From: Selaginella moellendorffii
Lineage: Eukaryota; Plantae; Lycopodiophyta
Assembly (NCBI RefSeq): GCF_000143415.4
Contig: NW_003314307.1
Coordinates: forward strand, 138,922-202,921
DNA length: 64,000 nt
Direction: 5' to 3'
The stretch's first letter is position 1. Each line of letters opens with the position of its first letter. Under the pieces are notes generated by a model. The model made no database searches. It was not told where the DNA came from and was given only the letters and a program-made list of their open reading frames with translations. The translations under genes were made by a program, and so were the position numbers. This document shows, piece by piece, positions 20,623 through 51,112 of this stretch.

Positions 20623-23600
20623 AGAGAAAGGTGGGGACTTATGATCAATCTATAATAGTTATCCCCATGGTTATGGATTAGACCCATGTGCCAAAGTTAG
20701 CCTGCCAAAACTGACCCAAGTACAAACAAACAAGAGAAACGAAACTTTGATTTATAGAAATATATTATTTTATTGATTTGCAAGATTTATTACAAGATTT
20801 ACAAAAGCTAGTCTTTATTATGATTTTCATACTCTGTGACAAGCTCACAAGCATGCGTAAGATTCCTAAGAGGCTCCCAAGTTGATTCACAAGATGGGTA
20901 ACCTTTCCATTTAACTAAATATTCTTTAGTTCGACCACCACGTGCCTTACGAGATAAAAGAATAACCTCAACCTCATACTCCGGTTCACCATCAATAACA
21001 TTTAGAGCTGGATGGACATCCCTAGAGTGGCTAGGATCCTTATGATATGGGGCCAGTAAATTGACATGAAACACAATATGAAGTCTAGACATCTCTTGTG
21101 GAATATCCAACTGATAGGATACATCACCAATTTGTTTCAACACCCAATAAGGTCCAACATATCATGGTAACAGCTTCCAAGACAAAGATCCCTTAATATT
21201 CAAGTTCTGGGAAGATAGCCACATCTGATCTCCCACATGATAGAATACATGTCGACAATGCTGATCCTTATCATGATACCTATCCTGAGCTTCGCCCATT
21301 GCCTTAGTAGCTCTAGACCAAACTTGGCATAGCTGCTCCACATAAGTCTCAACAGCAGGGGTTAACATTCGGGACATTGGTTTCGACACAACAATCTTCC
21401 CTTCTAGCATTGTGTGTGAAGATTGTGATCCAAGATCCTTCACACAACAATCTTGGATCCCACGGTGCGGTGAATTGAGGAGGAATGTACAATCTTCGGT
21501 AATGGTGATGTTATTGCTGCCTGGAAGTCCTCTCCTCACTATTGTGTGACTGATCCCTCCAACTAAAATTGCTGTTTCCAGACTCCCATTAGGCCATGCA
21601 AGTGTAGTGTTGCCATGCCAATCCCACAACCTCATACCAGTATAGCTGTACCCTTGGTGCTATCCATTAGGAATCACAACCAAAGGTGAGCCGCTCCTCT
21701 CAGATCCAGGTTGAAGTTACATTTCTGCACTCCAACAAGCTAGCTTGATGCAGCCTCTAACACGAGCCATGCCTCTCGAAACATCCCATACATCTAAATG
21801 GCGGTGCTTTGAGTGCCTTGATCATGGTGAATCTAGCCGCTTTTCTACACCAACTCCAAACTCTATCTAACTCAATTGCCAAAATTTCAAAAGTCAATAT
21901 CCCTTTCGGGCCACATCATACAAATTACAAACTAAGGTCTAAGCTAACCAAAGTCAACTCCAACCCTTTCACTAATTTGTACTAATTTATAAAAATGGAA
22001 AGGTTTTTGAGCAAAATTATCAAGAGATTAGCTATTGGAAAAGTCTAAGAAAATTTATGGAAATTTTTCCATCCTAAAGAAAGAATGACTCTTAGTCTAA
22101 GAATATAAACTTTTAAGACTTAACCAACTTCTTCCTATTTACAATTTCACATAGATTCACCTCAACACAAATTTTTATGACCCAACACTAGGCTTAAACA
22201 TTAAACATTATGCCCATGTTTCCAAATCTAATATCGACATTTATAAAATGCAAAATAAATATCCAAGGCTCAATCACAAAGACTACATCTTTGATTATCC
22301 ACATTGCACTAATACTTTTCTTCAACTACCTTCAGGATCCAATGTGAAGCCAAAACACTAACAAAAAAAATGACATGGAAAATCAAGTTCTAAGGAAAAT
22401 TCCTCATTACTCGAAATAACAATACCACTTCCACTAACAGAAGTGCTAATAATGTCAATACCTCAACTACACACCTTTTTCATTTAACAATCTACTCCAA
22501 GTGCTAATGGATAGACCAACAAACTATAACAAGTGAATACTATAACCCTTTCCAACACCTTATGGGCAAACTCTCAAGGAAACAAGGTACCAACATAAAC
22601 TTAACATATCATAGATCACTATTAAAAACTTAGTTAAAGCTACTACAAAGAAATTTTATAAACACATTGCTCACAATCATATAGATATAATATAAAATCA
22701 CAATGACTTGATCATCAATTGAGCAACACCATAAGTAATGCTCATGTCATTATTTTGAAGGTTTATGTGAATATCAAATGCCAACTTGATTTGATAAAAT
22801 GCAACATAAATGCCACACCTCACTAATAAAGATTTACAACACTAAAGAACACTAACTTTATTCGCAACATAGATAAGCTCATATTACTTTTTATCTGACT
22901 AAACTCAAAACTGATCCAACACTAAGCTACTCAAAGAGCAATAGCAAGGTTCCCTGGAAAAGAATTGAGCATTGCAACCCAAGTTATGAATAGTAAGCCT
23001 AAACAAAATGGTTTAGTGCTTCATTGCTATCCATCCCACGACTCACCATTTGCAAGACTACTACAACTAACATGCATCAAGGTAGGGACTCTTGATCGTA
23101 TAATATGAACACAAATAATGAGTTAACATCTTATTGCAAATCAAAAAAAGTAAATGATTTACATGTTTGATCCTTCATCCCTGAGGATTCTTTTTTCGGT
23201 CTCCATCTTTGACTAAAATTTAAGCTTGCTTTCGCACTGCCTTCAGTTCAATCCAAGAAAAATTTATTAGAGAGCATGGCAATGACTACTTGAACCAACA
23301 GATTAATCCCAATAGTCTTGATTGATCCACTTATAATCATACTTAAGAAGAATCTACTAGTACCATAGTAAATAGCTATAGACCAGCCTATTTACCACTC
23401 ATAGTAAACCCAAAGAAGTTTTATTTTTTCCCATGGCACATAGAACAACTCATGGAACCATTGGAACAATTCATGGAACCACTAATGGGCTAATATTAAT
23501 CCTACCAACTCAAAGTGTAACCTTGAGTTGCTAATATGCCTCACTCACAAGCCCAAGTGCAAACTTGTATAAGCAAAATATCTTACATCCATCTTGTGAG

Positions 23601-24938: not shown

Positions 24939-25679
24939 CTCTCCCCCCCTAGGGAAGATTGATGTCCTTGTTGATGTATACCCAAGTTTAGCAAACTGTC
25001 ATGGAAACAATTCCAAAAGTTAACAGAAAGCACACTATATAAGAAACACACTGACTTAAATGAGTTATGGAACGACCTTTCCTTTATGTCTAAAGATGTT
25101 AAAACTCAAACACCCTTTGGCCATCACCGACAAGGAAATGACTAATGGAGTTAGCCACCCTTGCTGCTCTGAGTACCACTCGGCTTATAAAGGAATGATA
25201 CATCCTTGCCTGCAGAGACATAGGAAGAGGGCTAGAGGCTGAATTACCCCTAAGCAAAGAAATCAACCCTATCGAGAAGATTTAGACAAGTATTATAAAT
25301 GGGCAGATTAAGTTGTTTATATGACTACACCCCTTTCAAAAATGAGTCATTGAGAGAGAGGTAGGGACTTGTGATTAGTCTATAATAGTTATCCCTGGTT
25401 ATGGATTGGACCCATGCACCAAAGTGCTGAAGTCAGTCTGCCAAAACTGACCCAAGTACAAACGAATGAAAGAAACAAAACTTTGATTTATAGAAATATA
25501 TTACTTTATTGATTTGCAAGATTTATTACAAGATTGACAAAAACTAGTCTTTATTATGATTCTCATACTCTGTGACAAGCTCACAAGCATGCGTAAGATT
25601 TCTAAGAGGCTCCCAAGTTGATTCACAAGATGGGTAACCTTTCCATTTAACTAAATATTCTTTGGTTCGACCACCACGT

Positions 25680-25935
25680 TGTCACGAATGTGACTTTGGG
25701 TATTGAAAATTACCTATCGGCCAATCTTTACGGACAATCTTTCCTTACTGCCACGATGGTAGGAGGTCAGTATTGCTGGACCCTTTATTAGTCCCTCTTG
25801 TTCAAGTGTTAGTAAACTGGACTTTGCTGTACTTGGCCGGACGAGCATAAGGAAGGAATTCCTACGTGTCTATTTAACCAAGTATATTTGGCCTAGCTTT
25901 TTAGTTCTCTTTTGCTTTATCTTGCACTGTCCTAC
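25680..25935 (+). mobile_element. Truncated family-B LTR fragment in opposite orientation
   Basis: tgtcacgaatgtgactttggg is the reverse complement of the LTR end at 47700-47719. Confidence 0.7.
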
Positions 25936-27129
25936 ACAAGTTCTGGGAAGATAGCCACACCTCATTTCCCACTTGATAGGATACATCCCAATGATGCTAA
26001 TCCTTGTCATGTCAATACCTATCCTAAGCTTTGCTTATTGCCTTAGTAGCTCTAGACCGACATTGACATAGCTGCTCCACATAAGTCTCAACAGCCGGGA
26101 CCGACACTTCGAACATTGGTTTTGGCACAACAATCTATTAAGGCACCCCACAAGCATTCCCTTGTAGCATCTCCCATGGAGAACAACCAATAGCGCTATG
26201 GAATGTGTTGTTATAATAGATTTCTGTTGTATCTAAATGCTCAACCTAGTCGCATTAGTCCACTACAACATAGTACTATAGATAATCCTCAACTTGAGCA
26301 TTCACGTGTTCAATCTGCCCATTGGTTTGAGGATGATAAGCTGTACTAAAGTGTAAGCCACAAATTTTTCCTTTCCAATTTGCCAGCTTACCTCGTCTAT
26401 CCGTCCAACACTGCCTTGGCTTTTGCTAAGTTCCCTTGCCAAGGTTCTCGCCTATGGTACCAGCTCCTACTTGGTTTCAGCTACTCACTGCACGAGCAAC
26501 AGAGTGTTAGCCATCCTTCCACGGATTCCCAAATCACTCCCAATCCCCCTCCCCGGGTTAGACTGGACTTAAGGTTCGGCTACACTCCCCGCAAGCACAA
26601 GCAGCCAAGCACACCAAGCTTCCAGGTTCCTAACATCCCTTGGTACCACAAGACTTGATCATGGGACCCTCTAAATCCCAAGTCTTGAGTGCAACACTTG
26701 CTTCGGGACGCCGGGGCGAAACACCGTGGCCTAACGGCCCGGTATGGGTACCTCTCGCCCCCCACATCCATCCCGAAGGAAGGCCCAAGCCCCTAGGAAG
26801 GGCGAGGACCAATGAGCCGCATGGTACTCAAGTGGGGCACCACTCCACATGAGCCGGGAGCACCGCAATCGGTTTCCCTTTCGGGAGTGGGAGCTGCTCT
26901 TGAGCACTTCCTTGGATGGCCCCTCCGGCACCAGCCAAGTCCATGCTCACTCCCACCCAAGGCCCCTTAGTCCCAGTCCCAACCTCAAGTCGGTTTGGAA
27001 GCCCAACTGGAGAGTCCCTTCAAAACTGGTTCCTGGACCTCACTATCCCTACTATACTTTTGGAACCCCCTGCAGCCCCCCCCCCCTGGGGGACGCACGC
27101 TTTGGGCTTTCACCCCTTGACCCGTATTA

Positions 27130-27410
27130 GTATTTGGACTTAGTCTCTGGCTCGATCTTGGATCCGATTTCGGATCCGACTTCGGATTCGGTCTCGGACT
27201 CGATCGCGGACTCGATCTCGGACCTGATCTCGGGCCCGACCTCGGACTCGACTTCGGACTCGGTCTCGGACCCGATTTCGGATCTCGGACTCCGTCTCGA
27301 ACTCGGTCTCGAACTCGGACTCGAACTCGGTCCCCGAGTCGGTCTTGGACTCGATTCCGGACTCTATCTCGAACTCGGTCCTAGAGTCGGTCTTGGACTC
27401 GATCTTTGAC
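27130..27410. repeat. Hexamer-based (ctcgga-type) tandem array inside LTR A (also 33514-33794)
   Basis: Direct reading; source of spurious SD/RD-repeat ORFs. Confidence 0.9.
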
Positions 27411-27820
27411 TTGGTCCCATCCGATGAACTCTTTGTCATTTTGGTCATGCTTTCGGGGTTCCCTTAGCCTACGACACCTCGGCGAGTTGGTTCCTTACAA
27501 CTCCACCACCCATAGAAGAAGTTCGATGCCCACATCGAACGTCTCTTTTTTATCCTACGACTTGTTGACCATGTCTCCGGGGGCATCCCCCCACTTAGCG
27601 GTGTGCCTAAGTTAGCCTCCCCGGCCAAGAGCTCATGACAACGGAATATAGGTGTCCCTATACTCCACCCCTCACCACGCCCTAGTATGGGGTCGGGACT
27701 TGAACCCAGCCTTGCTTTACTAGGGGGTTGGGACTCGAACCCAACCTCCGTAGAATACGTCTACGGTTTCGACATCCCCGCAGGGAGTCGGGCGTAGCTC
27801 CCTACGCCTGGTCGACCTAG

Positions 27821-30800
27821 CTAACCCATGCTAATTAGCTCACCTTTGGCGCGCCTTCGGGTCCCAACATATGCCACTTGCTCAACTTTGCAAATTGATA
27901 TTTTTAATTGAACTTTGCATAAGTACATAGAGTTCTGCCTTGCAGAAATTCCTCCACTAGATCTCGCGCGTTCGCTAGGTTCTCCTCCGGTTCCCATGTT
28001 GCTTCGCAGTGTGGAAATCCTTTCCACTTCACATGGAACTCTCTCACCTCGCGTCCTTGTCGCTTGCTCTTGCGCGCATTGAGGATGGCCTCGACTTCGT
28101 ATTCCTCTTCCCCTTGGATAACCTCAGGTAAAGGTCTTACTTGGTCTTTGCGAAGCGGATCCTCAAAGTACGGCTTGAGTAAGTTCACATGGAACACTGG
28201 GTGCATCTTCCCCATCTCTCGAGGAAGTCGGAGTCGGTAAGCCACTTTACCGATTCGTGCCTCAATCTCGTAAGGCCCCGCGAACCTGCTTAAGGAACTC
28301 AAGATCAATTCATTTACAGGAATACATGCATTTTTACCTTTGGGTCAACTTTCGGCTGATCCCACTTGGTAGCCTAAGGTTCTTGGTGTTCAGCCACACC
28401 TTCTCCCCAGCTTGGAACTCTACGTCCCGGCGCTTTAGGTTCGCGTACTTGGTTTGCCTTTGTTGAGCCCGTTCCAAGGAATCCCTCACTAGATTCCAAA
28501 TGTTGAGTCTTTCCGCCGTGAATGCCTCCACTGCGGGTAACTCTCCATGATACTCGGCCACGCCGAGTTCCACAGGACCTTCAATAGCTCGCCCATTGAT
28601 GACTTCCCATGGACTCACCCCGATACTCGAATGTGGTGAGTTGTTATAACACATTTCCGCAAGTCCCAAATGACTTACCCAATCGGTCTGGTCTCCCGAG
28701 ACATAGCATCGCAAATAATCCTCCAGCTGCCTATTCACCCTTTCCGTTTGTCCGTCTGTCAAGAAGTGTTAGGACCACCAAACTTGACTTAATACCCCAT
28801 ACCTGTCTGTGGGTGATAGGCTGTGCTGAATTTCAACTTGGTGCGATACTGTTCTAGGAGGGTCCTCCAGAACCTACTAGTGAAGATCTTATCTCGATCT
28901 GAGATAATCTCCTCTAGCCTTCCCCGCACTCGAACCACTTGTTCGAAGAACAGTTTCGCCACACCTTCCGCATCCACCTCCGTTGTGGTGGGTATGAAAT
29001 GTGCCATCTTCGAAAATCGGTCCACCACCACGAATATCGCATCGAACCCCTCGCTTGGGGGTAGTCCCGTGATGAAGTCCATCGTGAGACATTTCCACGG
29101 ACGATCTGGAATTGGGATGCTTTGCAACAAGCCCCCACTAGCCTTAGTCACGGCTTTGACCTGCTGACATGTTGGACATGTCTTTACATAGTCTTGGACG
29201 TCCTTAGCCATATCTGGCCAATGGTACTTCCTCTTGAGTAAGCCCATCGTCTTGGGCACTCCGCCGTGTCCCGCAAGAGGTCCGTCATGACACTCTTCTA
29301 AGGCTACCTTCCTTAGTCCACCTTCTGGAACATACACCCTCGTTTGCTTGTAATAAATGAGTCCATTGCGTTCCGCATAGCCCGTTTTCTCTTCCGTTGG
29401 CGGCTCACCTCTCTGGTGAGCTTCCCGTGCCTCCAGATTCCTCAACAACACTTCTTGTGCTAGACCATCGTTCTCATATGCTGTCCGCACATCGTCCCAG
29501 AAGGTTGCTGTTGCGCTGGAGATCGCCAACCTCAAGCTCGCTTTTCGACTTAGCGCATCTGCCACGATGTTGCTCTTCCCAGGCTTGTACAGAATCTCGC
29601 AATCAAACTCGGCCAAAGCATTGGCCCACCGACCTTGTTTCCCTCTCAGGTCGGGTTGTGACAAGAAGTGTTTCGTTGCCACATTCTCCGTGTAAACCTT
29701 GAAGTGTCTCCCAAGGTAGTGTCGCCACTCCTTGAGCGCCTTGACCACCGCAAACAATTCCTTCTCGTGGGCAAGCCACTTCCGTTGAGCCTTGTCCAGC
29801 TTCTTCGAGAAGAACGCTACTGGATGGTTGTCTTGCTTCAAAACTGCGCCTAACGCAAAGTCCAAAGCATCCGTGTCTACCTCAAAGTCCTTACCAAAGT
29901 CCGGTAATGCCAACACCGGAGCCTTCCTCAACTTCCCTTTGAGGTGGACGAATGCCGCCTCGCATTCCGCTGTCCATACCATCTTCCCTTTTCCCGTTTG
30001 ATCCGTTAAGGGCAGGGCTACTCTCGAATAGTGTCTGATAAACTTTCGATAGTAGTTGCATAGCCCCAAGAACGCCCTCAACTCATGTACATTCGATGGT
30101 CGCTCCCATTCCTGGATCGCTTAGACCTTCTCCGGGTCCACCTTGAGCCCGTCCTGGCCCACCACATGCCCGAGAAACTTTACCTCTTGCTGAGCAAAGT
30201 CACATTTGCTCTCTTTAGCATACAGTTTATATTCCCTTAGTTTCTCAAACACCTTCGCCAAGTGTTCGGCATGCTCCTCTAGCGTCTCGCTATAGATCAG
30301 GATGTCGTCAATATAGACGACCACGAAGTGATCCAGATAGGGTACAAAGATGTGGTTCATCAACGCCGAAAACGTTGCCGGCGCATTGCACAGCCCAAAG
30401 GGCATCACCAAAAACTCAAAGCTCCCATACCTCGTTCGACAGGTTGTCTTCTCGACATCTTCCTTGGCTACCCTGATCTGGTAGTATCCTGACCTTAGGT
30501 CAATCCTCGAGAAGTATTTTGCCTTTCCCAACCTATCGAAGAGGTCCTCAATCCTTGGCAACGGGTACTTGTTCTTCTTGGTATACTTGTTGAGCAACCG
30601 GTAATCTATGCACATGCGCATAGATTCATCTTTCTTTTTCACAAATAGCACCGGCGCCCCATATGGCGACTTGCTCAACCTAACATACCCTTTGCCCACC
30701 AACTCCTCTAGTTGGCACTTGAGCTCCGCAAGTTCTTTTTCGTTCAAACGATAGGGGGGACGAACCACCGCCTCAGCGCCCTCGACAAGCTCAATCTTAT

Positions 30801-32676
30801 GTTCTATCGGTCGTGCGGGGGGCAACCCCGCCGGTAGCTCCTCCGGCATGGTATCCTGGAATTGGTCCAACACTCGCTGGATCACTAAAGGCACTTCTTC
30901 CGTTCTTGTCTTTTTGTCACTCTTCACCGAGAGTAAGCACAAAAAGGCTGCCTTAGTTCCTTTAGTGAGTTGTCCTCTCGTGGACACCAGGTTCAAGCAT
31001 GACTCTTTGGCCTTGCTTTGCCCTACCTTTAGATCCTGGGCCTCCACCCTAGACCTTCTTCCTTGGGCATTCGCCAATACCACAAGGTTCCTACCTTGTC
31101 CATGCAGGGCTACCACGAACCGATTAAACCAATCCATTCCGAAGATCACGTCAAATCCCGCCATATCCAAGACGGTGAAATCCATGTCCACTTTCCATGT
31201 CCCCACTTCGACTCTCGCTTGTCGAAGTACCTCATCGGTGCTTTGGCTACCCTGAACAAACTCTATAGTCCTTGGTTCGCCTAGCCGCTGCACCGTTAGT
31301 CCGGCTTGCCGGACTATGTCTGCAGCCACAAAATTATCCGAAGCACCCGTGTCAATAAGGATCTTAACAAAGCTACCTCCGAGCTTCCCTCGGAGGGCTA
31401 GTAGATGTCGCGAACGACTCTCTACCAAAGTTGCTCGTGTAATGAGTAACTTTGAGTTAGGGACTGGATCACATACCTCAGTTTGGACTTCACCCGACTT
31501 GATGGCCATATTGGCTTTGGCCTTCTTCGGGTAGGGACATTCCCTCGAGAAGTGTCCCGCTTCGCCGCAGTTGTAGCATACGTTGTTTCCCACGCTGCTA
31601 TACGACTTGACCTTCTTATCTGTGGGTTTGTCCTTTTTCGCTTGACTCCCCCACGTACTCGCTCGCTGGCCACTGGATTTGCCTTTCCGGAACCCCGAGG
31701 ACTCATTCTTAGAGAAACTCCTTTTGAATTTCCCCTTGCTATACGTTCCCCTTGGTTTGGCCCCTTTGCTAAATGTGGATCCCGACCCCGTCGTGTTCCC
31801 CTTTCGCAGGTTATCGTTGAAATGCACCTTGATGGCCGCATCCAACGCTTCCTTGTAGTTGGTCGGGTTCCACCTCATCACCTCGCCGTGAGCCCAGGTT
31901 TGCAAACCTGATATGAAGGCATGGAACGCATCCATATCCCCCATGTCCGTGACAAGTATCCTCTTTGCCATGAACCCATTCACATATTCCTGGATGGTTC
32001 CTGTCTGTTTCAGCCTACTCAGTTCATCCCTCAGATGCAGAGTGGCATTCGGAGGAACATATGTTGCGCGGATCCTCGCCTTCATCATGTCCCAAGTGAC
32101 CACCGGTCCTTCGTTGGCCTCCGTTGTTCTCCACCAAGACTTGGCATTATCTGCCAAGTATGGTTTTGCACATGGGACCTTCTCCGAGCTTGGTAACCGC
32201 AACGCTCGGAAGTAGTCCTCCATATCGTAAAACCAATCCTCCACCACCTTATAGTCATTCACTCCCTTGAAGACCGGTGGGGGCTTTGGTTTGTACTTGG
32301 GAACTGCCTGAGGGACTGATTCCACTTCGGTCTGTTCGACCTTGTCTGGTTTTGCCTCAGTCCCGGCCGAAAGATCCGCACCTTCTGCGCTGCCAGCATC
32401 CGCAGTCTTTCGCCTTTTCTTCCGCCTCTCGTCACGCTTCAGCTTGCGTACGAGAGTTTCCAGCAGGGCATTGGTCTGTGCCAACTGTCCTTCTAGCACG
32501 TCCAATCGAGCCTTGGACGACCGAACCTCGCCACCGGACTCCTGTTTGGAGGTTTCCTCACTGGAGTCCTCCTCATGCAAGGATTCCTCATCCATAGCCT
32601 CTTGTTCGACCGGAGGCTCCAGCTCTGGCGGAGGTTCCGTCTCCGCCTGGGTTCGCTTACGCCCTGCCCTTGCCAT
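27821..32676 (-). CDS. Gag-Pol polyprotein of element A; one premature TAA (30121-30123) and intron-like inserts 28756-28802, 28286-28337, 27886-27938
   Basis: Zn knuckle [14 protein letters not shown], protease LIDTGAS, RT YIDD, integrase HHCC and DDE, GPY/F, chromodomain. HPQT|DGQTER and KLTQR|FAGPY are restored exactly by GT-AG removal. Confidence 0.9.
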
Positions 32677-35600
32677 CTCCCAGCAATCCGCCTCTATCCT
32701 TCGCTAGAACTGAGGAAAAGGCTCCGATACCAAATTGTAAGCCACAAATTTTTCCTTTCCAATTTGCCAGCTTACCTCGTCTATCCGTCCAACACTGCCT
32801 TGGCTTTTGCTAAGTTCCCTTGCCAAGGTTCTCGCCTATGGTACCAGCTCCTACTTGGTTTCAGCTACTCACTGCACGAGCAACAGAGTGTTAGCCATCC
32901 TTCCACGGATTCCCAAATCACTCCCAATCCCCCTCCCCGGGTTAGACTGGACTTAAGGTTCGGCTACACTCCCCGCAAGCACAAGCAGCCAAGCACACCA
33001 AGCTTCCAGGTTCCTAACATCCCTTGGTACCACAAGACTTGATCATGGGACCCTCTAAATCCCAAGTCTTGAGTGCAACACTTGCTTCGGGACGCCGGGG
33101 CGAAACACCGTGGCCTAACGGCCCGGTATGGGTACCTCTCGCCCCCCACTTCCATCCCGAAGGAAGGCCCAAGCCCCTAGGAAGGGCGAGGACCAATGAG
33201 CCACATGGTACTCAAGTGGGGCACCACTCCACATGAGCCGGGAGCACCGCAATCGGTTTCCCTTTCGGGAGTGGGAGCTGCTCTTGAGCACTTCCTTGGA
33301 TGGCCCCTCCGGCACCAGCCAAGTCCATGCTCACTCCCACCCAAGGCCCCTTAGTCCCAGTCCCAACCTCAAGTCGGTTTGGAAGCCCAACTGGAGAGTC
33401 CCTTCAAAACTGGTTCCTGGACCTCACTATCCCTACTATACTTTTGGAACCCCCTGCAGCCCCCCCCCCCTGGGGGACGCACGCTTTGGGCTTTCACCCC
33501 TTGACCCGTATTAGTATTTGGACTTAGTCTCTGGCTCGATCTCGGATCCGATTTCGGATCCGACTTCGGATTCGGTCTCGGACTCGATCGCGGACTCGAT
33601 CTCGGACCCGATCTCGGGCCCGACCTCGGACTCGACTTCGGACTCGGTCTCGGACCCGATTTCGGATCTCGGACTCCGTCTCGAACTCGGTCTCGAACTC
33701 GGACTCGAACTCGGTCCCCGAGTCGGTCTTGGACTCGATTCCGGACTCTATCTCGAACTCGGTCCTAGAGTCGGTCTTGGACTCGATCTTTGACTTGGTC
33801 CCATCCGATGAACTCTTTGTCATTTTGGTCATGCTTTCGGGGTTCCCTTAGCCTACGACACCTCGGCGAGTTGGTTCCTTACATAAAGTTCAACTTGGTA
33901 CCGAATAACTAAAAGAGTGTGCCCCAAAACTTCCATGTAAATTTCGAATCCCTATCCGAAATCATCTCTTCAAGAAGACCACGAACCCGTACTACTTCAT
34001 GGAAAAAGAGATTTGCTACTTGCTTCACATTCACTGTTTCCACATTTGGAATGAAGTGTGCAATATTTAACAACCAATTTACAACCACCATCAAAGTATC
34101 ATAACCCTTAGACTTCAACAAGCAAGTAATGAAGTCAAGTGTCATACTCTAAAATGGCCATGCTAGTGCTAGAATGCACTGCAACTTTCCAGCCTGCTTC
34201 TCAATTCTGCACTTATATTGCTAGCATATAGGGCAAGAATAGACATAATCTGCTACATCACCTTCCATACCAGATCAAAAAAATCCCTTTTCAATAAAGT
34301 AAGAGTCTTTCGTTTTCCACCATGTCCCGCTACTAGAACATCATGATGTTCCCCCAAAAACAACTACTATAGATCCTCAGAGGGAAGATACAATCTTTTT
34401 TGTTTTTAGAATATAAGCCCATCATGAACTGAGAAGTGAAGCTTTGCATTTGTACAACTAGCAACTTTCATTGCATTATTATCAGGGTTCTGTTTTGACA
34501 ACTTCGCATGGTGAAAGATTGCCTTTGCCATTGGATCACTTCCATACAAAGTTCAAACGTCCTCCAACTAGTTTGAACTGAATGCTGATACTGCCTAGAA
34601 CTGAGTCTGATGACTCAACGCATCCAGAACAATATTGTCTTTACTAGGTTATATATGATTTCAATATTGAATCTAGTGAGCTTCTCTTGCCAATGAGCCT
34701 GCTTTGGCATAAGCTTAGGCTACATAGCAAAGTAGCTTAATGTGTTACTATCTATATAAACTTTGGTATGTCCACCCAAATAATGTCTCTAGTGTTCTAA
34801 CGTAGACACTATAGCAAACATCTCTTTCTCGTGGGTCGGCCATCTTTGTTGGGTTTCATCCAATTTCTTGGAATAGAATGCAATAGGACAACCATGTTGC
34901 CTTAGCATAACATCAATTGCTTTGTCACAATCTTGTTGCAACATGGCACCAATAGCATAGCCAGATGCATCACAATGCATTTTAAAAGGTTTATCAAGAT
35001 CCGGGATTCTGAGAATAAGAACCGTAGTCAAGATCTCCTTTAACCGTACAAAAGCATGCTGATAAACTGGTGTTCAATGAAATAGTATATTACTCTTTAT
35101 TAACTCAGTTAATGGAAGAGCAATTTTTGCAAATTGCAGATAAACTTGCAATAGTATCCCACCAAGATAACTTACTTGGTCAGAAATGACCTTTATCAAG
35201 AAGCTCTATGAGTTGCTTCTTGGATTCAACCATCTCCTTTATGTTCAAATGATACAAAGCTTTTGTAAGTGGTTTAGAACCCAGAATAACCTCAATCCAA
35301 CGATCAATCTCACAACTAGTAACCCTGGTGGCAAATCCTTCAAAAAGGTATTCTGATTCTTTGCCAACAACTCCAATATTTTATTTAATACAAGATCAAC
35401 CCTGTCACTGATTTGAACTGAGTCACCATCACCCTCAACTTCCATCACTTGAACCCAAAAGATCCAACATCCCTTCTTAGCTGGTTTTTAAGCAACTCTC
35501 GCAATCAAGAACTTAGCATCCCAATCCTTTGAGGAGCACATATTAGGACGTCCTTCTGACTTCAATGTGATGTGACTTTGTCCAGCACCATAAATCCCTT

Positions 35601-38283: not shown

Positions 38284-41200
38284 AGCAAGCTTAAGCAAAA
38301 TAGTTTAGCGTTTCACAGCTATCAATCCTACGATTTAGCACTTGTAAGACCATCATAACCAACATGTATCAAAATAAAGATTTTGACCACATGATGTGGA
38401 TAAGAGCAATGAGATCATACCTCATTGCGAATCATCTTTTGAAGAAGAGAAAATGATTTACATGTTTGATCCTTTGTCTCTAATAATTTTCTTTTTGAAC
38501 TCAACTTGACAAAACTCAAACTTGCATTTGCACTCCCTTTAGTCTAATCCAAGAAATGTTTATGAAAGAGCAAAATAATGACTACTTGAATCAATAAATT
38601 AATCCCTACAATCTTAATTGATCCACTCATAATCATACTTAGGAAAGATCCCTTAGTGTTGTGTTAAACAGCTATGGACCAACCTTTGCAAACCCAGGGG
38701 AGGTTTACTTTTACCTATGGTAACACAAAACCACTCATGGTAACATGGAAGCACTCATAGTAACCACCAATAAGCTAATATTAATCTTGCCAACTCAAAA
38801 TGTAACTTAAGTTGCTAATATGCCTTACTCACAAGCCCAAGTGCAAACTCATGGAAATGGAACATCTCACATCCATCTTATGAGCCCAAACAAAAACTCA
38901 TATGATCTAATATAAAAAAGTAACCAAAATCCATACCCAAGAGACATATTTGAAGTTTGTGAGGCACGAATCCCTAAGCCCCAAAGTAGAGCCGAAAGGG
39001 TGCCATGTGGTAGTGGCCAAAGCAAAAGCCAAACGAGCATAACACGTTTGGACTAAAAGGCTTCGACTTGAAAGGTTGAGAGCGGGAGTGGAACTCCCAA
39101 CGGAGTGCTCAAGGAACAAGCATGAAGCGAGCAATAAGTGAGGCTCCAAAAAGAGACCCAAAAGGACCAACACATGACACGTGGAAGTGTCTGCGATGGA
39201 GTCCGAGATGGACCCGAGTTGGAGTCCGAGGTGGAGTCCGAGATGGACCCGAGATGGAGTCTGAGATGGACCCGAGATGGAGTCCGAGATGGAGTCCGAG
39301 ATGGACTTGAGATAGAATCCGAGATGGAGTCCAAGAAGGACCCAAGATGGAGTCCGAGGTCGAGACCAAGACCGGGACTGAGACTGGGACCGAGACCGAG
39401 ACTGAGACCGAGACTGAGACTGAGACCGGGACCGAGACCGAGACCAGGGCCGAGGCCGAGACTGGGGCCGAGGCCGAGACTGGGACCGAGGCCGAGTCCG
39501 AGTCTGAGTTTGAGTCCAAGTCTGAGTCCAAGTTCGAGTCTGAGTCCGATTCCAATTCCGAGTCCGAGTCCGAGTCCGAGTCCAAGGCCGAGTCCGAGTC
39601 CGAGTCCGAGTCCGAGTCCGAGTCCGAGTCTGAGTCCGAGTCCGAGTCCGAGAGGGTGAAAGCCCAAAGCGTTTGTCTCCCAGACCCTGGGGGGTTTGGT
39701 GAGCTCCAAAAGTATAGTAACGGGGAGGACTGCAGTGGAGCCAATTTGGCCAGGAAAGGCCAGTTTGGCTCAGGAAGGCCAGACCCAGTGTTGGGTGATG
39801 AATTGACCACTGGGAAGTCCAAGACTAAAGTGAATACAGACCGACAAGCAGGGTAGCTTGGTGAAGTGTTCAAAAGCCGGCTCTAGTTCCCCCGGGAGAT
39901 CGACTGGCCGATGCTCCCAGTCCAAGTGTGGGTGGCACTACCTACTTGGATACCTGGTGTGGCTCAATTGAACCTCGCTCTAAGCCCATGGCTAAAGCAC
40001 CTAAAGGCGGAAGGTGGGGAGAGTACCCACGGGGCTCACGTAGGGCCACGGTGTTCCGAAATGTTGTCCCAAACTCCTAAATGGGGGAAAGGAGGAGGAG
40101 TAGTCCTCTAGTGTAGTGACTACGGATACGGTCACATGGTGAGGAAGTCCCAGAGGACAATGGGACTTAGTGGCCGGGCCTGCGAGCCTTGATCTAGTGG
40201 CAGTGTTGGTGAACATGGCCATTGATGGGAAAGGGACTTGGCAGGAACTGACAAAGGGAAGGCTATTCCCCATGTCTGTGGGCATCCTAAGGATGCTAAG
40301 GAGTGGATTTGGGATGACCACTCATAGACAGACAGCTTAGTCTTGGAGAGACGGGATTGTGATGCAAGTGGTATTGGACCACTAGTGCAGCAAAGGTGAA
40401 TGGGCATGGCCTTAGTGTAACGGGCCAATATGTCAATGGTACCTTTGGGTGTCGGTCTTGGGACTGGACACATGGAGCACTTGGACCAAGTGCAAGGGAG
40501 GAGTGGCATGGATGCCATTCTCGAGACTAACAAGTCCCAAGTCCTGAATTGGACTTAAGGAAGTCATGAATGAGACTCCTCCAAGGGGTCAGAGGTGTGG
40601 TTAAGTGATGAAAATAGAATGGAAAAAGTTATAGCAACCAAACATGTATCCACTCAGATTATCCCTTGGACACATAGGCTAAAGGCACTATAGTGAAACC
40701 CAAGTTTAGGGCTTTGGGCCACTAAACAAAGAGACAAAGCCAAACTCTTGAGCATATAGCCAAGGGGCATAGGAAATGAGAGCATGAAATAATTTTGAGC
40801 GTACAACCCAACGAGCAAAAGGATAAAACCATGGAACAACTCTTGAGTGTACAGCCCAAAGAATGAAGGGACATGAACAAGGAGTGATGTTGGAGCAATT
40901 CTAGAGCTCATAGCATCCCAACACCAAGACCAACATGCAAAATAGAGCTCAATGAAGTTTGAGGATATAGGTACTCTATTAACTACCATAGTATGGAGTT
41001 TGGGCTTGGACCCAAGCCAAACACAGAACAAGGACAAACACACAAGTGAGAGCTAAACTATACCTCAAGTTAATCTGCCATACTTGACCTATACATTTGA
41101 AACCTTCTATACCCCCCTCCCCCTAGAGGAACACATGCTTCAAGCTTTCACCCCAATCCCATGAGTTAGTCTATGGGATAATCACAAAAATTTACTAAAT

Positions 41201-44827: not shown

Positions 44828-47719
44828 TGTAGCGCACATGGTTTTTACCCTTTATCCTATAGTGATTTACCATAGGATAACACCACGAAGCAAAACCTAA
44901 ACCCTCTTTGTGCCACGTGACAGATGCCACATGTCACATGCCACGTGTCCAAAGGAATGTGGTGTGGAACCCGAGGTTCAGGGCCTTGGGCCACTGAACG
45001 AAGGAACGGTGCCAAATTCCCAAGCGTGGAGCCAAGGAATGATGGAACCGGAGCACAGAGCAACTCCTGAGCATACAGCCCAAAGAGCGAAGGGACAGGA
45101 GGCCAGAGTGACTTGGAACAGTCCTGGAGCAACCAGCATCCCAATGCCAGGACCAGCATGCAAAACGGAGCCAAACGGAGTCTGGCATTATTTCGGCATG
45201 TCGGTGGCCTAATGCGAGGACATGGGTACTCCACCAGCTAGCATGGTGTGGAACTTGGGCTTATACCCAAGCCGGACAAGCATGCAAGAATAAGGACAGG
45301 CACACAAGTGGGAGTTAGACTATGCCTCAGGTGTAAGGGACTAAATTTTCCATTCTACTTTAGTCACTTAATCACACCTTTGACCACTTGGAGGAGTCTC
45401 ACTCACAACCTCCATAAATCTCATTTTGGACCTGGGCTTGCTAGCCTCGAGATTGGCATCCTTGCCACTCAACCTTTGCACTTGGTCGAAGTGCTCCACG
45501 TGTCCGATCCTATGACCGACACCCCAAGGTACCATCGACATATCAGCCTGTTACACTAAGACTATGCCCCTTCACCTTGGTCACACTGGTGATCTAACAC
45601 CACCTGCATCATAATCCCGTCTCTCAAGGACTGGGCCATCCATCCATGAGTGATCATCCCAGATCCACTCCTTAGTATCTTTAGGATGCCCATAGACATG
45701 GGGATAAGCCTTCCCCAATACCCCTTTTCCAGTCCCCACCAAGTCCCTTTTTGTCCATGGCCATGTTTGCCAACACTGCCACTGAACCAAGGCCCACAAA
45801 CCCGATCACTAAGTCCCATGGTCCTTTGGGACTTCTTCCTCACACGATCGTATCCTTGGTCTCTACACTAGAGGATAACTCCTCTCCCTTTTCACAGACT
45901 AGGACTTTGGGGCAACATTTCGGAACACCATGGCCTTAAGCGAGCCTCGTGGGTACTCTCTCCACCTTCCACCTTTGGGTGCTCTAGCCATGGGCTTAGA
46001 GCGAGGTTCTGTTGAGCCATACCAGATATCCAAGTAGGTAGTGCCACCCACACTTGGACTGGGAGCATCGACCATTCGATCTCCCGGGGGAACTAAAGCC
46101 GGCTCTTGAACACTTCATTAAGCTACCCCACTTGTCGGTCCATATTCACTCTAGTCTTGGACTTCCCAATGGTCAGTTTATCACCCAACACTAGGTATGG
46201 CCTTCCTAGGCCCAACTGGCCTTTCATGAGGCCAAACTGGCCTTTCCTGGCCAAACTGGCTCCACTGGGCTCCAACCCCCACACTCTCCCTACTATACTT
46301 TTGGAACCCCCCGCAGCCCCCCCCTAGGGGACGATTGCTTTGGGCTTTCACCCAACAGCTAGTATTAGTATTCGGACTCGGACTCGAACTTGGACTCGGA
46401 CTCGGTCTCAGTCTTAGTCTTGGTCTCGGTTCCATCTCAGACTCCATCTCGGGTTTGTCTCAGACTCCATCTCGGGTCCATCTCAGACTCCATCTCAGAC
46501 TCCATCTCGGGTCCATCTCGGACTCCATCTTGGGTCCATCTTGGACTCCATCTCGGGTCCATCTCAGACTCCATCTCGGAATCCATCTCGGGTCCATCTC
46601 AGGTCCATCTCATACTTGATCTTGGGTCCATTTCAGACTCCATCTCGGGTCCATCTCGGAATCCATCTTGGGTTCATCTCAGACTCCATCTCGGGTCCAT
46701 CTCGGACTCCAACTTGGGTCCATCTCGGACTCCAACTTGGGTCCATCTCGGACTCCAACTTGGGTCCATCTCGGACTCCAACTTGGGTCCATCTCGGACT
46801 CCATCTCGGGTCCATCTCGAGTCCATCTTGGATTCCTCCACGTGTCACGTGTTGGTCCTTTTGGGTCCCTTTTAGGAGCCTCGCTTATTGCTCACTTTAT
46901 GCTCGTTCCTCGAGCACTTTGTTGGGAGTTCCACTCTCGCTCTCGACCTTTCACATCGGAGGTTTTAGTCCAAACATGTTATGCTCGTTTAGCTTTCGCT
47001 TCAGCCATTACCACGTGGCACCCTTTCGGCTCTACTTTGGGGCCTAGGGATTTTGTGTCTCACATCAAGTTGGTCAGCCATGCCCGACCTACCCACTATC
47101 CCTACTATACATTTGGAACCCCCCACAGCCCTCCCCCCCCTTGAGGAACACACGCTTTGGGCTTTCACCCTAAGCCTCATTTAGTATCAGGAGTTAGTCT
47201 CTAGAACAAGCTCAAAACTTACTAAATATGGAATAGCGCTAGATTGCGAATTTGGACACGGGATGAACACCATTGTATTTAGACAATCTCTACATTCTGT
47301 AGATATGCCAAATAAGCAAATTTAAACACTTTCCATAAATAGCATTTGGGACCAAAATGAGACTAGCACAAAGGGCATGATAGCAAGGGTGTTTGGCAGA
47401 CACGGTAAGCTATCATCCAGTAATATTGAGGGACTAATCTCAATATGCGAGGGTTTCTTGTCACTAGCTAGTGCAAGACATAACGAGATGGGAACTCCTT
47501 ACCAGGCTAAGTATGCTTAGCTAATAACATGTAGGAATTCCGTCCTTATGCTCGTCTGGTCTAAGTACACTCGAAATGCCCAATTAACTCCACTAGCACA
47601 AAAGGGACTGATAAAGAGTCCAGCAATACCGACCTCCTGCTGTCGTGGCAATAAGGAAAGAGTATCCGAAAGGACTAACCGATAGGTAACTTTCGATACC
47701 CAAAGTCACATTCGCGACA
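44828..47719 (-). mobile_element. Solo family-B LTR carrying a nested solo D LTR
   Basis: TGTAGCG...CGCGACA with perfect TSD CCAAT. Confidence 0.92.
45332..47064 (-). mobile_element. Solo LTR family D (1.7 kb) with ctccatctcgga array
   Basis: TGTAAG...CTCACA, TSD tcagg/tcaag; the empty site ctatgcctcaagttgg is seen in the LTR at about 24260. Confidence 0.9.
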
Positions 47720-48949: not shown

Positions 48950-51112
48950 ATACTCAAAGAAGTATCTAGGCAAGAAACTCTTAGATCAGAAATTGGTGCT
49001 ACTATAAGAGATTTCTCCTTAGAGGAGGATGTTGCTTATAAAATTGATTAACCAAGAAATTATATTTTATATATTTCTTGTGATCAACCACTTGAGCAAA
49101 TCAATTTAGCAAATGAGAATAATACTCATACTGTCACAATTGTTCAAGGATTGCAAAGTGAATTTCACAATCAGGCTATAAATCTACTAAAAGACTATAA
49201 AGACATTTTTGCCTAATCTTACATAGATTTAAAAGGCATCCCGGCAGAACTCTATATACACCATATTCAAATATTCTCAGGAAATATGCCTAAAAGGCAA
49301 ATGCCCTATAAAATGAATCTTAATTACTAAAGTAAAGTTATGGAAGAAATTGATAAAGTTCTCAAAGCAAGATTCATCTATTCAATCGAAAATGCTCAAT
49401 GGCTTTCATCACTTGTAATTATGCTTAAGAAAAATGGTAAATTACGAGTTTTTAAATTACAAAAAGTTAAATGATGCAATAAAAAAGGATAAAGTAACAT
49501 CTAAAGATCAATATAAAACGGCTTTTATAAGCTTATGGGGAGTTTATGCCTATTATAAAATGCCTTTTGGTTTATGCAATACTTCTTTTACATTTCAAAG
49601 AGTTGTTATGGACACTTTTAGAGAATATCTCATATATTTCATGAGAGTTTTCATGGATGATTTTAGTGTTTTTAGCTCCATAAAGGAATATTTAATTTGC
49701 TTGTAAAAATATTTCAAAAAATATAGAGAACATAACATTTTTCTTAATCCAGAGATGTAGCGCACCTTATATCTCTCCTTTTAAGCCAATTGGAAAAGGG
49801 GCAATTGCTTGATGAGAGAGCTCTTAGTGGCTATTTTATCCCCATTTATCCCTTAAGGTTCCAAGGATCCACAGTGACAGTATATCCAAATCTCATCCCA
49901 TGATCACATATGTTACATTCACCCCCCTTTAGAAATGTCAATTTCTTCATTAATTATTGATTAGCAACCCCTACTGAGCCAAGGGAGAACCAACACCTCC
50001 ATTTCTGCATTAAATTTACCAATTTTTCTATTGTGTAAACCAACTATTCCATGTGAGGCAACTAATCATCCACCCGTACCGCAGTTCCACAGTGGATACT
50101 TTTGTCCGTGGATACTCCACACAAAAGGAAGGACGTACGCACGGATGCCCAATATATACAATTTCAAATTTATGGGTGGAAATATATTTTGCTCAAAGGT
50201 ATATTATATTTTTAAGTAGCCACTAATCAATGGGAATCAAACTCGTGCCATTTGCTTCGATACCACATTTAGTGCACCTTATCTCTCTCCTCTTAAGTCA
50301 ATTAGAAAAGGGGCAATTGCTTGATAAAAGAGCCTTTAGTGGCTATTTTATCCATATTTATCCTTCAAGGTTCTAAGGATCCATGGTGACAGTATATCCA
50401 AAATGATCATATGCGCTACAAGAGAAATGTACTTTCTTTGTAAATTTGGACATACTTTTAAGTCATATTGTATGTAAGGAGGGTATTCTTATAGACAAAA
50501 ACAAAACTCAAGTGATTGAGACTATGTCTTAAAAAGTCTTTATTGCTTTATAGGCAAAGTTGACTATTACAAATGATTTGTAAAAGCTTATGTAAAAATT
50601 GCCAAGCTAGTTATTGATATTTTAAAAAAAGATACTCTATTTATATGGAATGAAAATTATCAAGAAGAATTTTTAAGGCTTAAAGAATTCCTCAAAAAAG
50701 CACTTATGCTTATTAAGCTCAACTGGACAAAAGAGTTTCACTTACAGATAGATACTTCTGATATTGCCACAAATGCAATATTATCCTAGACACAAGGTGA
50801 TCGAAAAGATCATCTTATCTACTATGCTACTAAACATTTAAATCTTGCTGAGTATGACTACACAACGACTGAAAAAGAAGCCTTATACATAGTTTACACT
50901 TTACAAAACTTTAGGCATTATCTTTTAGCAACAAAAGTAATTGTCTTTGCAAGGCTCTTTTATATCTCATCAACAAGCCTTGCATATTTGCTCGACTAAC
51001 TAAATAGTTTTTACTATTACAAGAATATAATCTTGACATAATACATAAACCTGGAAAATTCTATGAATAAACTAATTACCTAAGTCACATCACTACAGAA
51101 GAGTTACATAAT
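48950..51112 (+). mobile_element. Highly decayed non-chromovirus gypsy (Athila/Tat-like) RT-RNase H
   Basis: DIFA*SYIDLKGIPAEL, WGVYAYYKMPFGLCN, FMDDFSV, YTTTEKEAL, NYLSHI. Confidence 0.8.
49756..50420 (-). mobile_element. Complete TRIM (665 bp)
   Basis: LTRs 49756-49917 and 50268-50420; PBS TGGTATCGAAGC; PPT AAAGGGGGGTGAA; TSD AGAGA; splits RT peptide LNPE|KC. Confidence 0.93.

What the first reader, a model, noticed from the sequence alone, without database searches (positions are those of the whole stretch)
28286..28802. A young LTR retrotransposon whose integrase is split by spliceosomal introns
Seen: two AT-rich inserts in the GC-rich integrase of element A. The first is 47 nt, gtatgg...ctaac...ttgacag (28756-28802). 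The second is 52 nt, gtaaaa...taagcag (28286-28337). Both are GT-AG, both fall in the host's intron size range (43-75 nt in NHX), and both carry stops or frameshifts. Exact removal restores conserved HPQT|DGQTER and KLTQR|FAGPY. The other gypsy integrases in the window (about 4380, 21165, 26330) lack them. Knowledge: reverse transcription of spliced RNA removes introns; known LTR-element splicing (Ogre PR/RT intron, copia and BARE-1 Gag splicing) does not normally interrupt the integrase core. Inference: with LTRs about 99.6% identical, several unrelated post-insertion gains are unlikely. The family probably packages unspliced genomic RNA and translates integrase from a separately spliced mRNA.
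Basis: partly seen in the sequence, partly recalled or inferred. Interest (0 to 1): 0.95.

Follow-up and report, generated by a model that had tools for sequence, protein, structure and literature searches.

The report
Retrotransposon carrying four working introns
A young, very abundant plant LTR retrotransposon (a chromovirus) has two short host-type introns inside its integrase gene, plus one in the leader and one over the protease, and RNA assemblies show all four cut out exactly, so a complete integrase can only come from spliced RNA while only unspliced RNA can found new copies.

Summary
Element A is a minus-strand chromovirus at 26352-33883. Its LTRs are 1148 nt with 4 mismatches, and it has a TAAAG target duplication. 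Its integrase frame is broken by a 47-nt GT..AG insert (28802-28756, phase 1) and a 52-nt one (28337-28286, phase 2).

- **Splicing:** contigs from two RNA-type runs of separate studies run collinear with the window but skip exactly these two inserts.
- **Junctions:** in uninterrupted homologues the three exon pieces abut, with only the split codon between them.
- **Selection:** 31 of 40 listed differences from the expressed relative are synonymous. In the two downstream exons it is 13 of 15, in frames reachable only by splicing.
- **DNA:** a DNA run lays about 52,000 family contigs with no dip over intron 2, an inconclusive small one over intron 1, and no intron-less joint among those listed.

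The same RNA contigs reveal two more introns. A 157-nt one (31476-31320) removes the protease active site and leaves a Gag-only frame. A 66-nt leader intron (32775-32710) removes the LTR end and the primer-binding site. That would explain why spliced RNA leaves no intron-less copies.

Packaging of unspliced RNA is inferred, not shown. This copy also has an in-frame stop. The scan noted the same two-intron pattern on at least nine other pieces of this genome. The nearest precedents are Ogre and copia/EVADE splicing.

The parts
32736..33883 (-). 5' LTR (1148 nt, TG..CA); holds the leader splice donor and an array of 12-nt repeats
   Evidence: Offset-6384 identity scan shows 4 mismatches to the other LTR.
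26352..27499 (-). 3' LTR
33884..33888 (.). Target-site duplication TAAAG (its partner is at 26347-26351)
32710..32775 (-). Leader intron, 66 nt, GAG|GTAAGC ... CCTTTTCCTCAG|. It removes the last 40 nt of the LTR, the primer-binding site and the bases after it.
   Evidence: X15 contig record 11 matches the window up to 32711. It then continues with letters that match LTR 32807-32778 at 28 of 30 positions (table 7).
32721..32732 (-). Primer-binding site TGGTATCGGAGC, 3 nt after the LTR. It resembles the initiator tRNA-Met site with one mismatch (own knowledge).
30124..32676 (-). Open frame of 851 codons: Gag (Retrotrans_gag, zinc knuckle), protease, reverse transcriptase
31320..31476 (-). Alternative intron, 157 nt, GTATGT..GCAG, phase 0, inside the open frame. 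Removal deletes the protease DTGA motif and leaves Gag (400 codons) + Thr + TAG.
   Evidence: X15 contig record 10 skips exactly 31320-31476 (table 8).
30121..30123 (-). In-frame TAA between reverse transcriptase and RNase H (DPEKV*AIQEW). It breaks this copy's frame.
28803..30120 (-). Exon with RNase H, the integrase zinc finger, and the integrase core up to HPQT
   Evidence: Pfam RT_RNaseH, Integrase_H2C2, rve
28756..28802 (-). Integrase intron 1, 47 nt, GTATGG..GACAG, phase 1. It splits the Asp codon three codons before the catalytic Glu of DGQTER.
   Evidence: Skipped by X15 record 9 and X17 record 13.
28338..28755 (-). Integrase exon 2 (end of the core up to the start of the SH3-like domain)
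28286..28337 (-). Integrase intron 2, 52 nt, GTAAAA..AGCAG, phase 2, inside the Tf2-type SH3 domain
   Evidence: Skipped by X15 record 9 and X17 record 12. The aligner writes 28284-28335, which is the same joint shifted by the repeated GT.
27904..28285 (-). Integrase exon 3: the rest of the SH3-like domain, the chromodomain and the stop codon
   Evidence: Pfam SH3_Tf2-1 (profile positions 24-63), Chromo
27501..27511 (-). G-rich tract next to the 3' LTR (polypurine-tract-like; not tested)

Best explanation
Element A belongs to a high-copy, recently active chromovirus family (Ty3/gypsy with a C-terminal chromodomain). Its transcript carries four ordinary U2-type GT..AG introns of host size.

**Shown**
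- RNA assemblies of a 95-97% identical family member have all four segments removed at exact GT|AG borders.
- Removing the two integrase introns restores a frame collinear with uninterrupted integrases.
- The exons behind those introns are under purifying selection in the spliced frames.
- Unspliced, the frame ends before the catalytic Glu of the integrase core and lacks the SH3-like domain and the chromodomain.

**Inferred**
- The family runs on three RNA classes.
  - Fully unspliced RNA keeps the primer-binding site. It is the only template that can be reverse-transcribed, so every new copy inherits all the introns.
  - RNA spliced at the leader and both integrase introns, but keeping the 157-nt protease segment, encodes complete Gag-Pol with a working integrase.
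  - Fully spliced RNA, the form that was assembled, ends just after the nucleocapsid and gives Gag alone. This supplies the excess of structural protein.
- The leader intron removes the LTR end and the primer-binding site. Spliced RNAs therefore cannot prime minus-strand synthesis, which would explain why intron-less copies do not take over.
- This particular copy is probably dead, because of an in-frame stop between reverse transcriptase and RNase H.
For: - **Anatomy:** LTRs, target duplication, primer-binding site and domain order Gag-PR-RT-RH-IN-chromodomain.
- **Splicing of the integrase introns:** X15 record 9 (2500 nt) lies on 28803-30555, 28336-28755 and 27957-28283 with contiguous record coordinates. 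X17 records 12 and 13, from a different study, show the same two skips (table 8).
- **The other two introns:** X15 record 10 skips 31320-31476. X15 record 11 jumps from 32711 into LTR sequence 32807-32778.
- **These runs behave as RNA:** only 3 and 6 family contigs were laid, at depth 2-11, with no intron-bearing form. The DNA run laid 52,578 contigs.
- **DNA keeps the introns:** X1 depth in the intron-2 bin is 1.03 million against 1.01 and 0.89 million beside it. Nine contigs carry a variant intron-1 sequence at 28772. No 47-, 52- or 157-nt joint is among the best-supported joints.
- **Collinearity:** in 13 uninterrupted homologues the pieces abut with exactly one residue between them at both junctions. 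All the listed top homologues whose sequence reaches the site (44 of 59 compared) read HPQT/DGQTE without a break, apart from a substituted residue in some; the rest end before it.
- **Selection:** 31 of 40 listed differences are synonymous (P = 3e-8). In exons 2 and 3 it is 13 of 15 (P = 4e-5).
- **Host introns** in the same window are about 50-67 nt.
Against: - The run type of X15 and X17 is a guess ('RNA?'), and these are assembled contigs, not reads.
- The expressed copy is 3-5% diverged from this one. Its own DNA was not seen, so in principle it could lack the inserts.
- The list of X1 joints is truncated (18 not shown, some not counted), so rare intron-less DNA copies are not excluded.
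- Depth in the intron-1 bin is about 19% below its neighbours, which is within the scatter of the bins but not decisive.
- No unspliced RNA was seen. The one raw RNA run gave only 8 reads.
- No isoform was seen that keeps the 157-nt segment while lacking the integrase introns. The existence of a Gag-Pol mRNA is therefore inferred.
- A Gag-only mRNA with two downstream exon junctions should attract nonsense-mediated decay (own knowledge), which the model does not address.
- The synonymous count uses only the 40 best-supported of 241 differences.
Confidence: 0.8

Rival explanations
1. The inserts are lineage-specific insertions, not introns. The RNA contigs would then be plain transcripts of sister copies that never had them or lost them.
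For: The expressed sequence differs from this copy by 3-5%, and its genomic source was not seen. The X1 joint list is truncated.
Against: - All four skipped segments start with GT and end with AG, with good donor motifs (GTAAGC, GTATGT, GTATGG, GTAAAA).
- One skipped segment is coding sequence that holds the protease active site. Another holds the primer-binding site. A DNA copy lacking both would be dead.
- No such joints are among the best-supported ones in the DNA run, while intron-bearing sequence is present at full family depth.
- At least nine other pieces of the genome were noted with the same 516/517-nt pattern (unchecked notes).
Confidence: 0.05
2. The introns are spliced, but they are a tolerated handicap with no role. 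Intron-bearing copies would be non-autonomous passengers, supplied with integrase in trans by other chromoviruses.
For: - The window holds several other gypsy elements with uninterrupted integrases.
- No cis signal was found in the introns: folding z-scores are -1.5 and +0.1.
- This copy itself is broken by a stop.
Against: - The integrase exons behind the introns are under strong purifying selection in the spliced frames. This is not expected if the family's own integrase were dispensable.
- The other integrases in the window are only 25-51% identical.
- The Gag-only splice and the removal of the primer site look like an integrated programme.
Confidence: 0.1
3. Technical artefact: X15 and X17 are DNA runs, or the assembler or aligner created the skips.
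For: The run kinds are guessed. Logan contigs can collapse repeats.
Against: - Two studies give the same exact joints.
- Record coordinates are contiguous across each skip.
- Assemblers do not delete GT..AG-bounded segments.
- A DNA run of this organism would show the family at huge multiplicity with its introns, as X1 does.
Confidence: 0.03

Closest known systems
Ogre LTR retrotransposons of legumes (Tat/Ogre lineage)
   Same: This is a plant Ty3/gypsy element whose polyprotein frame is interrupted by a spliceosomal intron. [quoted passage not shown] 2019, PMC6317226, citing Neumann 2003 and Steinbauerova 2008; review PMC12786077). In both cases the intron survives retrotransposition.
   Different: [quoted passage not shown] Here there are four introns. 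Two of them sit inside the integrase, one next to the catalytic Glu and one in the SH3-like domain. The element is a chromovirus in a non-seed plant.
Gag-only splicing of Ty1/copia elements (Drosophila copia, barley BARE, Arabidopsis EVADE)
   Same: An alternative intron centred on the protease domain yields an RNA that encodes Gag alone, giving an excess of structural protein (Oberlin et al. 2017, PMC5580714; Chang et al. 2013, PMC3735527). The 157-nt intron here removes the protease active site and leaves a stop two codons after the joint.
   Different: That strategy was described as particular to Ty1/copia, whereas this is a Ty3/gypsy chromovirus. Coupled premature termination was not tested here. 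The copia-type elements have no introns in the integrase.
Retroviral leader splice donors (in HTLV/BLV and foamy viruses the donor lies in R, upstream of the primer site; own knowledge)
   Same: A donor inside the LTR-derived leader makes the spliced RNAs lack sequences needed for replication. Unspliced RNA then serves as the genome.
   Different: In retroviruses splicing gives access to env and accessory genes, and Gag-Pol is read from unspliced RNA. Here the unspliced RNA cannot encode a complete integrase.
Other intron-retaining retroelements (Penelope-like elements, some DIRS/Ngaro; own knowledge)
   Same: These are retroelements that keep introns through retrotransposition.
   Different: They belong to different element classes with different replication mechanisms. 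They were not compared here.

Membership tests
Ty3/gypsy chromovirus | Two LTRs with TG..CA ends, flanked by a short target-site duplication | tested here: met
   LTRs of 1148 nt, 99.65% identical, with a TAAAG duplication
Ty3/gypsy chromovirus | Domain order Gag-PR-RT-RNase H-IN | tested here: met
   Pfam hits in that order along the pieces
Ty3/gypsy chromovirus | Chromodomain at the integrase C-terminus | tested here: met
   PF00385 Chromo, E = 1.3e-16, in exon 3
Ty3/gypsy chromovirus | Primer-binding site after the 5' LTR and a polypurine tract before the 3' LTR | tested here: inconclusive
   TGGTATCGGAGC lies 3 nt after the LTR and looks like an initiator tRNA-Met site with one mismatch (own knowledge). 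The tract before the 3' LTR is G-rich but interrupted.
U2-type spliceosomal intron | GT..AG termini with donor and branch-like motifs | tested here: met
   GTATGG..CTAAC..ACAG; GTAAAA..TTGAT..GCAG; GTATGT..GCAG; GTAAGC..CCTTTTCCTCAG
U2-type spliceosomal intron | Exact removal in RNA | tested here: met
   Contigs of X15 and X17 (two studies) skip the segments exactly. Caveat: the run kind is guessed and these are contigs, not reads.
U2-type spliceosomal intron | Present in genomic DNA of the copies that are transcribed | tested here: inconclusive
   The family's DNA shows full depth over intron 2, a small inconclusive dip over intron 1, variant intron-1 contigs, and no listed intron-less joint. 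The locus that produced the RNA was not identified.
U2-type spliceosomal intron | Size and composition like the host's introns | tested here: met
   The introns are 47, 52 and 66 nt, against about 50-67 nt in the NHX-like gene read by eye. GC is 0.33-0.43 against 0.51-0.54 in exons. The 157-nt one is longer and exon-like (GC 0.48).
Ogre-type intron-bearing element | [quoted passage not shown] | tested here: not met
   The introns lie in the leader, over the protease and inside the integrase, and the element has a chromodomain. It works like Ogre but is not a member.
Copia/EVADE-type Gag-only splicing | Alternative intron over the protease that leaves a Gag-only frame | tested here: met
   Skipping 31476-31320 removes DTGA, and the frame then reads Thr-stop
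Copia/EVADE-type Gag-only splicing | Ty1/copia element; premature termination coupled to splicing | tested here: not met
   The element is Ty3/gypsy. Termination could not be tested with contigs.
Transposon-derived introns (introners) | Intron sequence repeated at many loci, with terminal repeats and a target duplication | tested here: not met
   There is no second copy of any of the three introns tested (the leader intron was not searched) in the 64-kb window. The short direct repeats at the borders (GACAG; AGGT) overlap the splice consensus. The rest of the genome was not searched.

The most novel reading that the evidence does not exclude
A plant chromovirus has evolved a retrovirus-like 'complex' expression programme built wholly from host-type introns. 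Integrase activity depends on the spliceosome, and Gag excess comes from an alternative intron over the protease. A leader intron strips the primer-binding site from every spliced RNA, so that only unspliced RNA can be copied. That would make the introns heritable and let the family reach very high copy number.
Probability: 0.5. Interest if true: 0.8.

Novelty: new variant of a known kind. Interest (0 to 1): 0.68.

Why it matters
Reverse transcription of spliced RNA should erase introns. A 2025 review states that plant LTR retrotransposons generally lack them, apart from Ogre and EVADE (PMC12786077). Here a young, very abundant family keeps four introns, two of them inside the integrase.

This turns an old question into a concrete test case with exact junctions to assay. 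The question is how a retroelement divides one transcript between translation and replication, and how its genomic RNA escapes the spliceosome.

It also shows that the Gag-only splicing trick, thought particular to Ty1/copia, occurs in a Ty3/gypsy element. There is a practical warning too. Annotation pipelines that demand one open pol frame will score such elements as degenerate, even though the family is evidently active.

Tried and rejected
- **Same-family proteins in the databases, to fetch other genomic copies.**
  - Exon 2 gave one weak hit.
  - The RNase H-integrase piece gave at best 48% identity, apart from two partial matches at 53% over under half the query.
  - The RT region gave at best 68%.
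  - The exhaustive representative search gave at best 50%.
  - No sister copy could be fetched, so the census of copies rests on the DNA run and on unchecked scan notes.
- **Raw RNA run X22.** Only 8 reads were laid. The one read near intron 1 fits both the spliced and the unspliced form. It gives no information on splicing ratios or on unspliced RNA.
- **A packaging or other cis structure in the integrase introns.** Folding z-scores are -1.48 and +0.13, and with flanks -0.48 and +1.10. Rejected as unsupported.
- **Introner or transposon origin of the introns.** There is no second copy in the window. The border repeats are explained by the splice consensus.
- **Identity with the published Selaginella element SM-Tcn1** (5704 bp, 440-bp LTRs, two frames, no tRNA primer site; PMC2864245). 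Rejected, because element A is 7532 bp with 1148-bp LTRs, one frame and a tRNA-type site.
- **Literature searches** found no description of introns inside an LTR-retrotransposon integrase. The Ogre splicing paper itself is not held.
- **Whether the in-frame stop at 30121-30123 is private to this copy** could not be decided.
Full report
**The sequence**

On the minus strand the frame that encodes the integrase core runs to ...HPQT and then meets GTATGG...CCTAAC...TTGACAG (28802-28756, 47 nt). After 418 nt of coding sequence it meets GTAAAA...TTAAGCAG (28337-28286, 52 nt). Read through, the frame stops after four codons in the first insert and at once in the second. The inserts have GC 0.43 and 0.33, against 0.51-0.54 in the surrounding coding sequence.

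**The element**

An identity scan at offset 6384 gives two LTRs of 1148 nt, at 26352-27499 and 32736-33883. They have TG..CA ends and four mismatches (99.65%), and they are flanked by TAAAG on both sides.

Three bases after the 5' LTR lies TGGTATCGGAGC, a tRNA-type primer-binding site. It resembles the initiator tRNA-Met site with one mismatch; that comparison is from my own knowledge.

Pfam places these domains, in order:
- Retrotrans_gag, a zinc knuckle, an aspartic protease and RVT_1 on the 851-codon frame 32676-30124.
- RNase H, the H2C2 zinc finger and the rve core on 30120-28804.
- The second half of the Tf2-type SH3 domain, plus a chromodomain, on 28284-27907.

This is a chromovirus. 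It is inserted into the integrase of an older gypsy element, whose halves lie at 35133-33885 and 26320-25565.

One in-frame TAA at 30123-30121 interrupts this copy between reverse transcriptase and RNase H, so this copy is probably not functional. I could not tell whether the stop is private to it.

**Are the inserts introns? Collinearity**

I kept the three coding pieces apart and aligned each to 13 uninterrupted homologues that carry the whole integrase. In every one, piece 1 ends at residue n and piece 2 starts at n+2. Wherever the alignment reaches the end of piece 2, piece 3 starts one residue after it.

The single missing residue is the split codon each time. It is phase 1 (G|AC) at the first site and phase 2 (AG|G) at the second. 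All the listed top homologues whose sequence reaches the first site (44 of the 59 compared) read HPQT/DGQTE without a break, some with a substituted residue; the rest end before it. The three other gypsy integrases in this window are also continuous across both sites.

The inserts are therefore specific to this family. The first one sits three codons before the catalytic Glu of the integrase core.

**Are the inserts introns? RNA**

Twenty runs of one organism hold the stretch or part of it, out of 24 listed. I laid one DNA run, two runs guessed to be RNA (from different studies), and one raw RNA run on 27500-32735.

- In X15 a 2500-nt contig lies on 28803-30555, 28336-28755 and 27957-28283, with contiguous coordinates of its own. 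It therefore lacks exactly the 47 nt and the 52 nt. The aligner's 28284-28335 is the same joint as 28286-28337, because GT stands on both sides.
- In X17 one contig shows the first skip and another contig shows the second.
- These two runs behave as RNA. They give 3 and 6 family contigs at depth 2-11 and contain no intron-bearing form. The DNA run X1 gives 52,578 contigs.
- In X1 the bin holding intron 2 is as deep as its neighbours (1.03 million, against 1.01 and 0.89 million).
- In X1 the bin holding intron 1 is about 19% lower than its neighbours. That is within the scatter of the bins.
- In X1 nine contigs carry a diverged version of intron 1 from 28772 on.
- In X1 none of the best-supported joints is a 47-, 52- or 157-nt skip. 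That list is truncated, so rare intron-less copies are not excluded.
- The raw RNA run gave only eight reads and says nothing either way.

**Selection**

The lay-out lists 40 positions where the X15 contig differs from the window. Placed in the frames of the separate exons, 31 of these are synonymous. About 34.5% of transitions in these exons would be synonymous by chance, which gives P = 3e-8.

In exons 2 and 3, 13 of 15 are synonymous (P = 4e-5). Those frames are reached from the upstream frame only if 47 and 52 nt are removed. The integrase tail has therefore been translated, in the spliced frame, throughout the divergence of these lineages.

Only the 40 best-supported of 241 differences were printed, so this is a sample.

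**Two more introns**

The same X15 contigs show two further skips.

*The protease intron.* A contig skips 31320-31476, which on the minus strand is GTATGT...GCTGCAG.
- It is 157 nt and lies inside the open frame.
- It starts at a codon boundary after codon 400, downstream of the zinc knuckle.
- It contains the protease DTGA motif.
- After the joint, this copy reads Thr and then TAG.
- The product would be Gag alone.
- A neighbouring note (s1-420496) proposed the same donor with a nearer acceptor. The RNA supports the donor but uses the acceptor at 31320.

*The leader intron.* The contig covering gag matches the window up to 32711. It then continues for 110 letters that do not match the window there (table 7).
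- The first 30 of those letters match the LTR at 32807-32778, with two mismatches.
- In the window that LTR segment ends ...GACGAG|GTAAGC.
- The break lies at CCTTTTCCTCAG|TTCTAG.
- This is a 66-nt GT..AG intron (32775-32710) that removes the last 40 nt of the LTR and the whole primer-binding site.
- A note on another copy (s1-344432) had proposed such an intron from sequence alone. I found that note only after deriving the intron from the RNA contig.

**How it most likely works**

What is shown:
- Four exact GT..AG removals in RNA.
- The dependence of a complete integrase frame on two of them.
- Purifying selection on the downstream exons.
- High multiplicity of intron-bearing DNA.

What is inferred:
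- Only fully unspliced RNA keeps the primer site. Only it can be reverse-transcribed, so new copies inherit all the introns.
- RNA that has lost the leader and integrase introns, but keeps the 157-nt segment, would encode full Gag-Pol.
- Fully spliced RNA, the only form assembled in X15, would encode Gag alone and supply the needed excess of capsid protein.
- The three short AT-rich introns resemble the host's. By eye these are about 50-67 nt in the NHX-like gene at 9300-10400. They are probably spliced efficiently.
- The 157-nt segment is longer and has exon-like composition, so it is probably spliced less efficiently.

How the genomic RNA escapes splicing is unknown. So is how a Gag-only mRNA with downstream junctions escapes decay. 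The integrase introns show no unusual folding, and no copy of three of the introns (the leader intron was not searched) occurs elsewhere in the window.

**Comparison with what is known**

- **Ogre.** A 2025 review states that plant LTR retrotransposons generally lack introns, with Ogre and EVADE as exceptions (PMC12786077). [quoted passage not shown] The present element works like Ogre in that respect. It is not a member of that lineage, since it has a chromodomain, and its introns sit elsewhere.
- **Copia-type Gag-only splicing.** Splicing centred on the protease that yields a Gag-only RNA was described as a conserved strategy of Ty1/copia (PMC5580714; BARE, PMC3735527). Here the same device occurs in a Ty3/gypsy element.
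- **Retroviruses.** Leader donors upstream of the primer site are known from some retroviruses (own knowledge).
- **SM-Tcn1.** The published Selaginella chromovirus SM-Tcn1 differs in length, LTR size, frame structure and primer site (PMC2864245).
- **Prior description.** I found no paper describing introns within an LTR-retrotransposon integrase. No protein in the databases is closer than 48-68% identity.

**Verdict**

It extends to a four-intron expression programme. I class it as a new variant of a known kind. The scan's first readers noted the same two-intron pattern, with spans of 516-517 nt, on at least nine other pieces of this genome. Those notes are unchecked.

Because the host is a plant, I built no consensus and no joined or repaired frame. 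The coding pieces were always handled apart.

Noticed in passing
window 31320-31476 (-): A 157-nt GT..AG segment inside the open gag-pol frame is skipped in an RNA contig. It removes the protease DTGA motif and leaves Gag + Thr + stop. A neighbouring note gave the same donor but an acceptor at 31398.
   Followed up: yes
window 32710-32775 (-): A 66-nt leader intron (GAG|GTAAGC ... CCTTTTCCTCAG|) spans the end of the 5' LTR and the primer-binding site. An RNA contig joins LTR sequence directly to 32709.
   Followed up: yes
window 30121-30123 (-): An in-frame TAA lies between reverse transcriptase and RNase H (DPEKV*AIQEW). It is unknown whether it is private to this copy or shared by the family.
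   Followed up: partly
window 33885-35133 and 25565-26346 (-): Element A is inserted into the integrase of an older gypsy element. The two halves of that integrase continue across the TAAAG duplication and lack both introns.
   Followed up: partly
window 27132-27430 and 33516-33814: Each LTR holds an array of about 25 degenerate 12-nt repeats (TCGGACTCGATC-like). Related arrays occur at about 39200-39720, 46280-46810 and 52030-52910.
   Followed up: no
window 9300-10400 (+): A host Na+/H+ exchanger-like gene ([19 protein letters not shown] motifs) has at least five GT..AG introns of about 50-67 nt, read by eye.
   Followed up: partly
window 27500-32735, DNA run X1: The family is extremely abundant: 52,578 short contigs were laid and the summed word depth is about 0.7-1.2 million. 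At several sites (28147, 29320, 29402) nearly all of the family depth carries a letter different from this copy's.
   Followed up: no
window 3122-4953 (+), 20829-21476 (-), 50538-50924 (+): Further gypsy pol fragments of other families, 24-51% identical in protein to element A.
   Followed up: no
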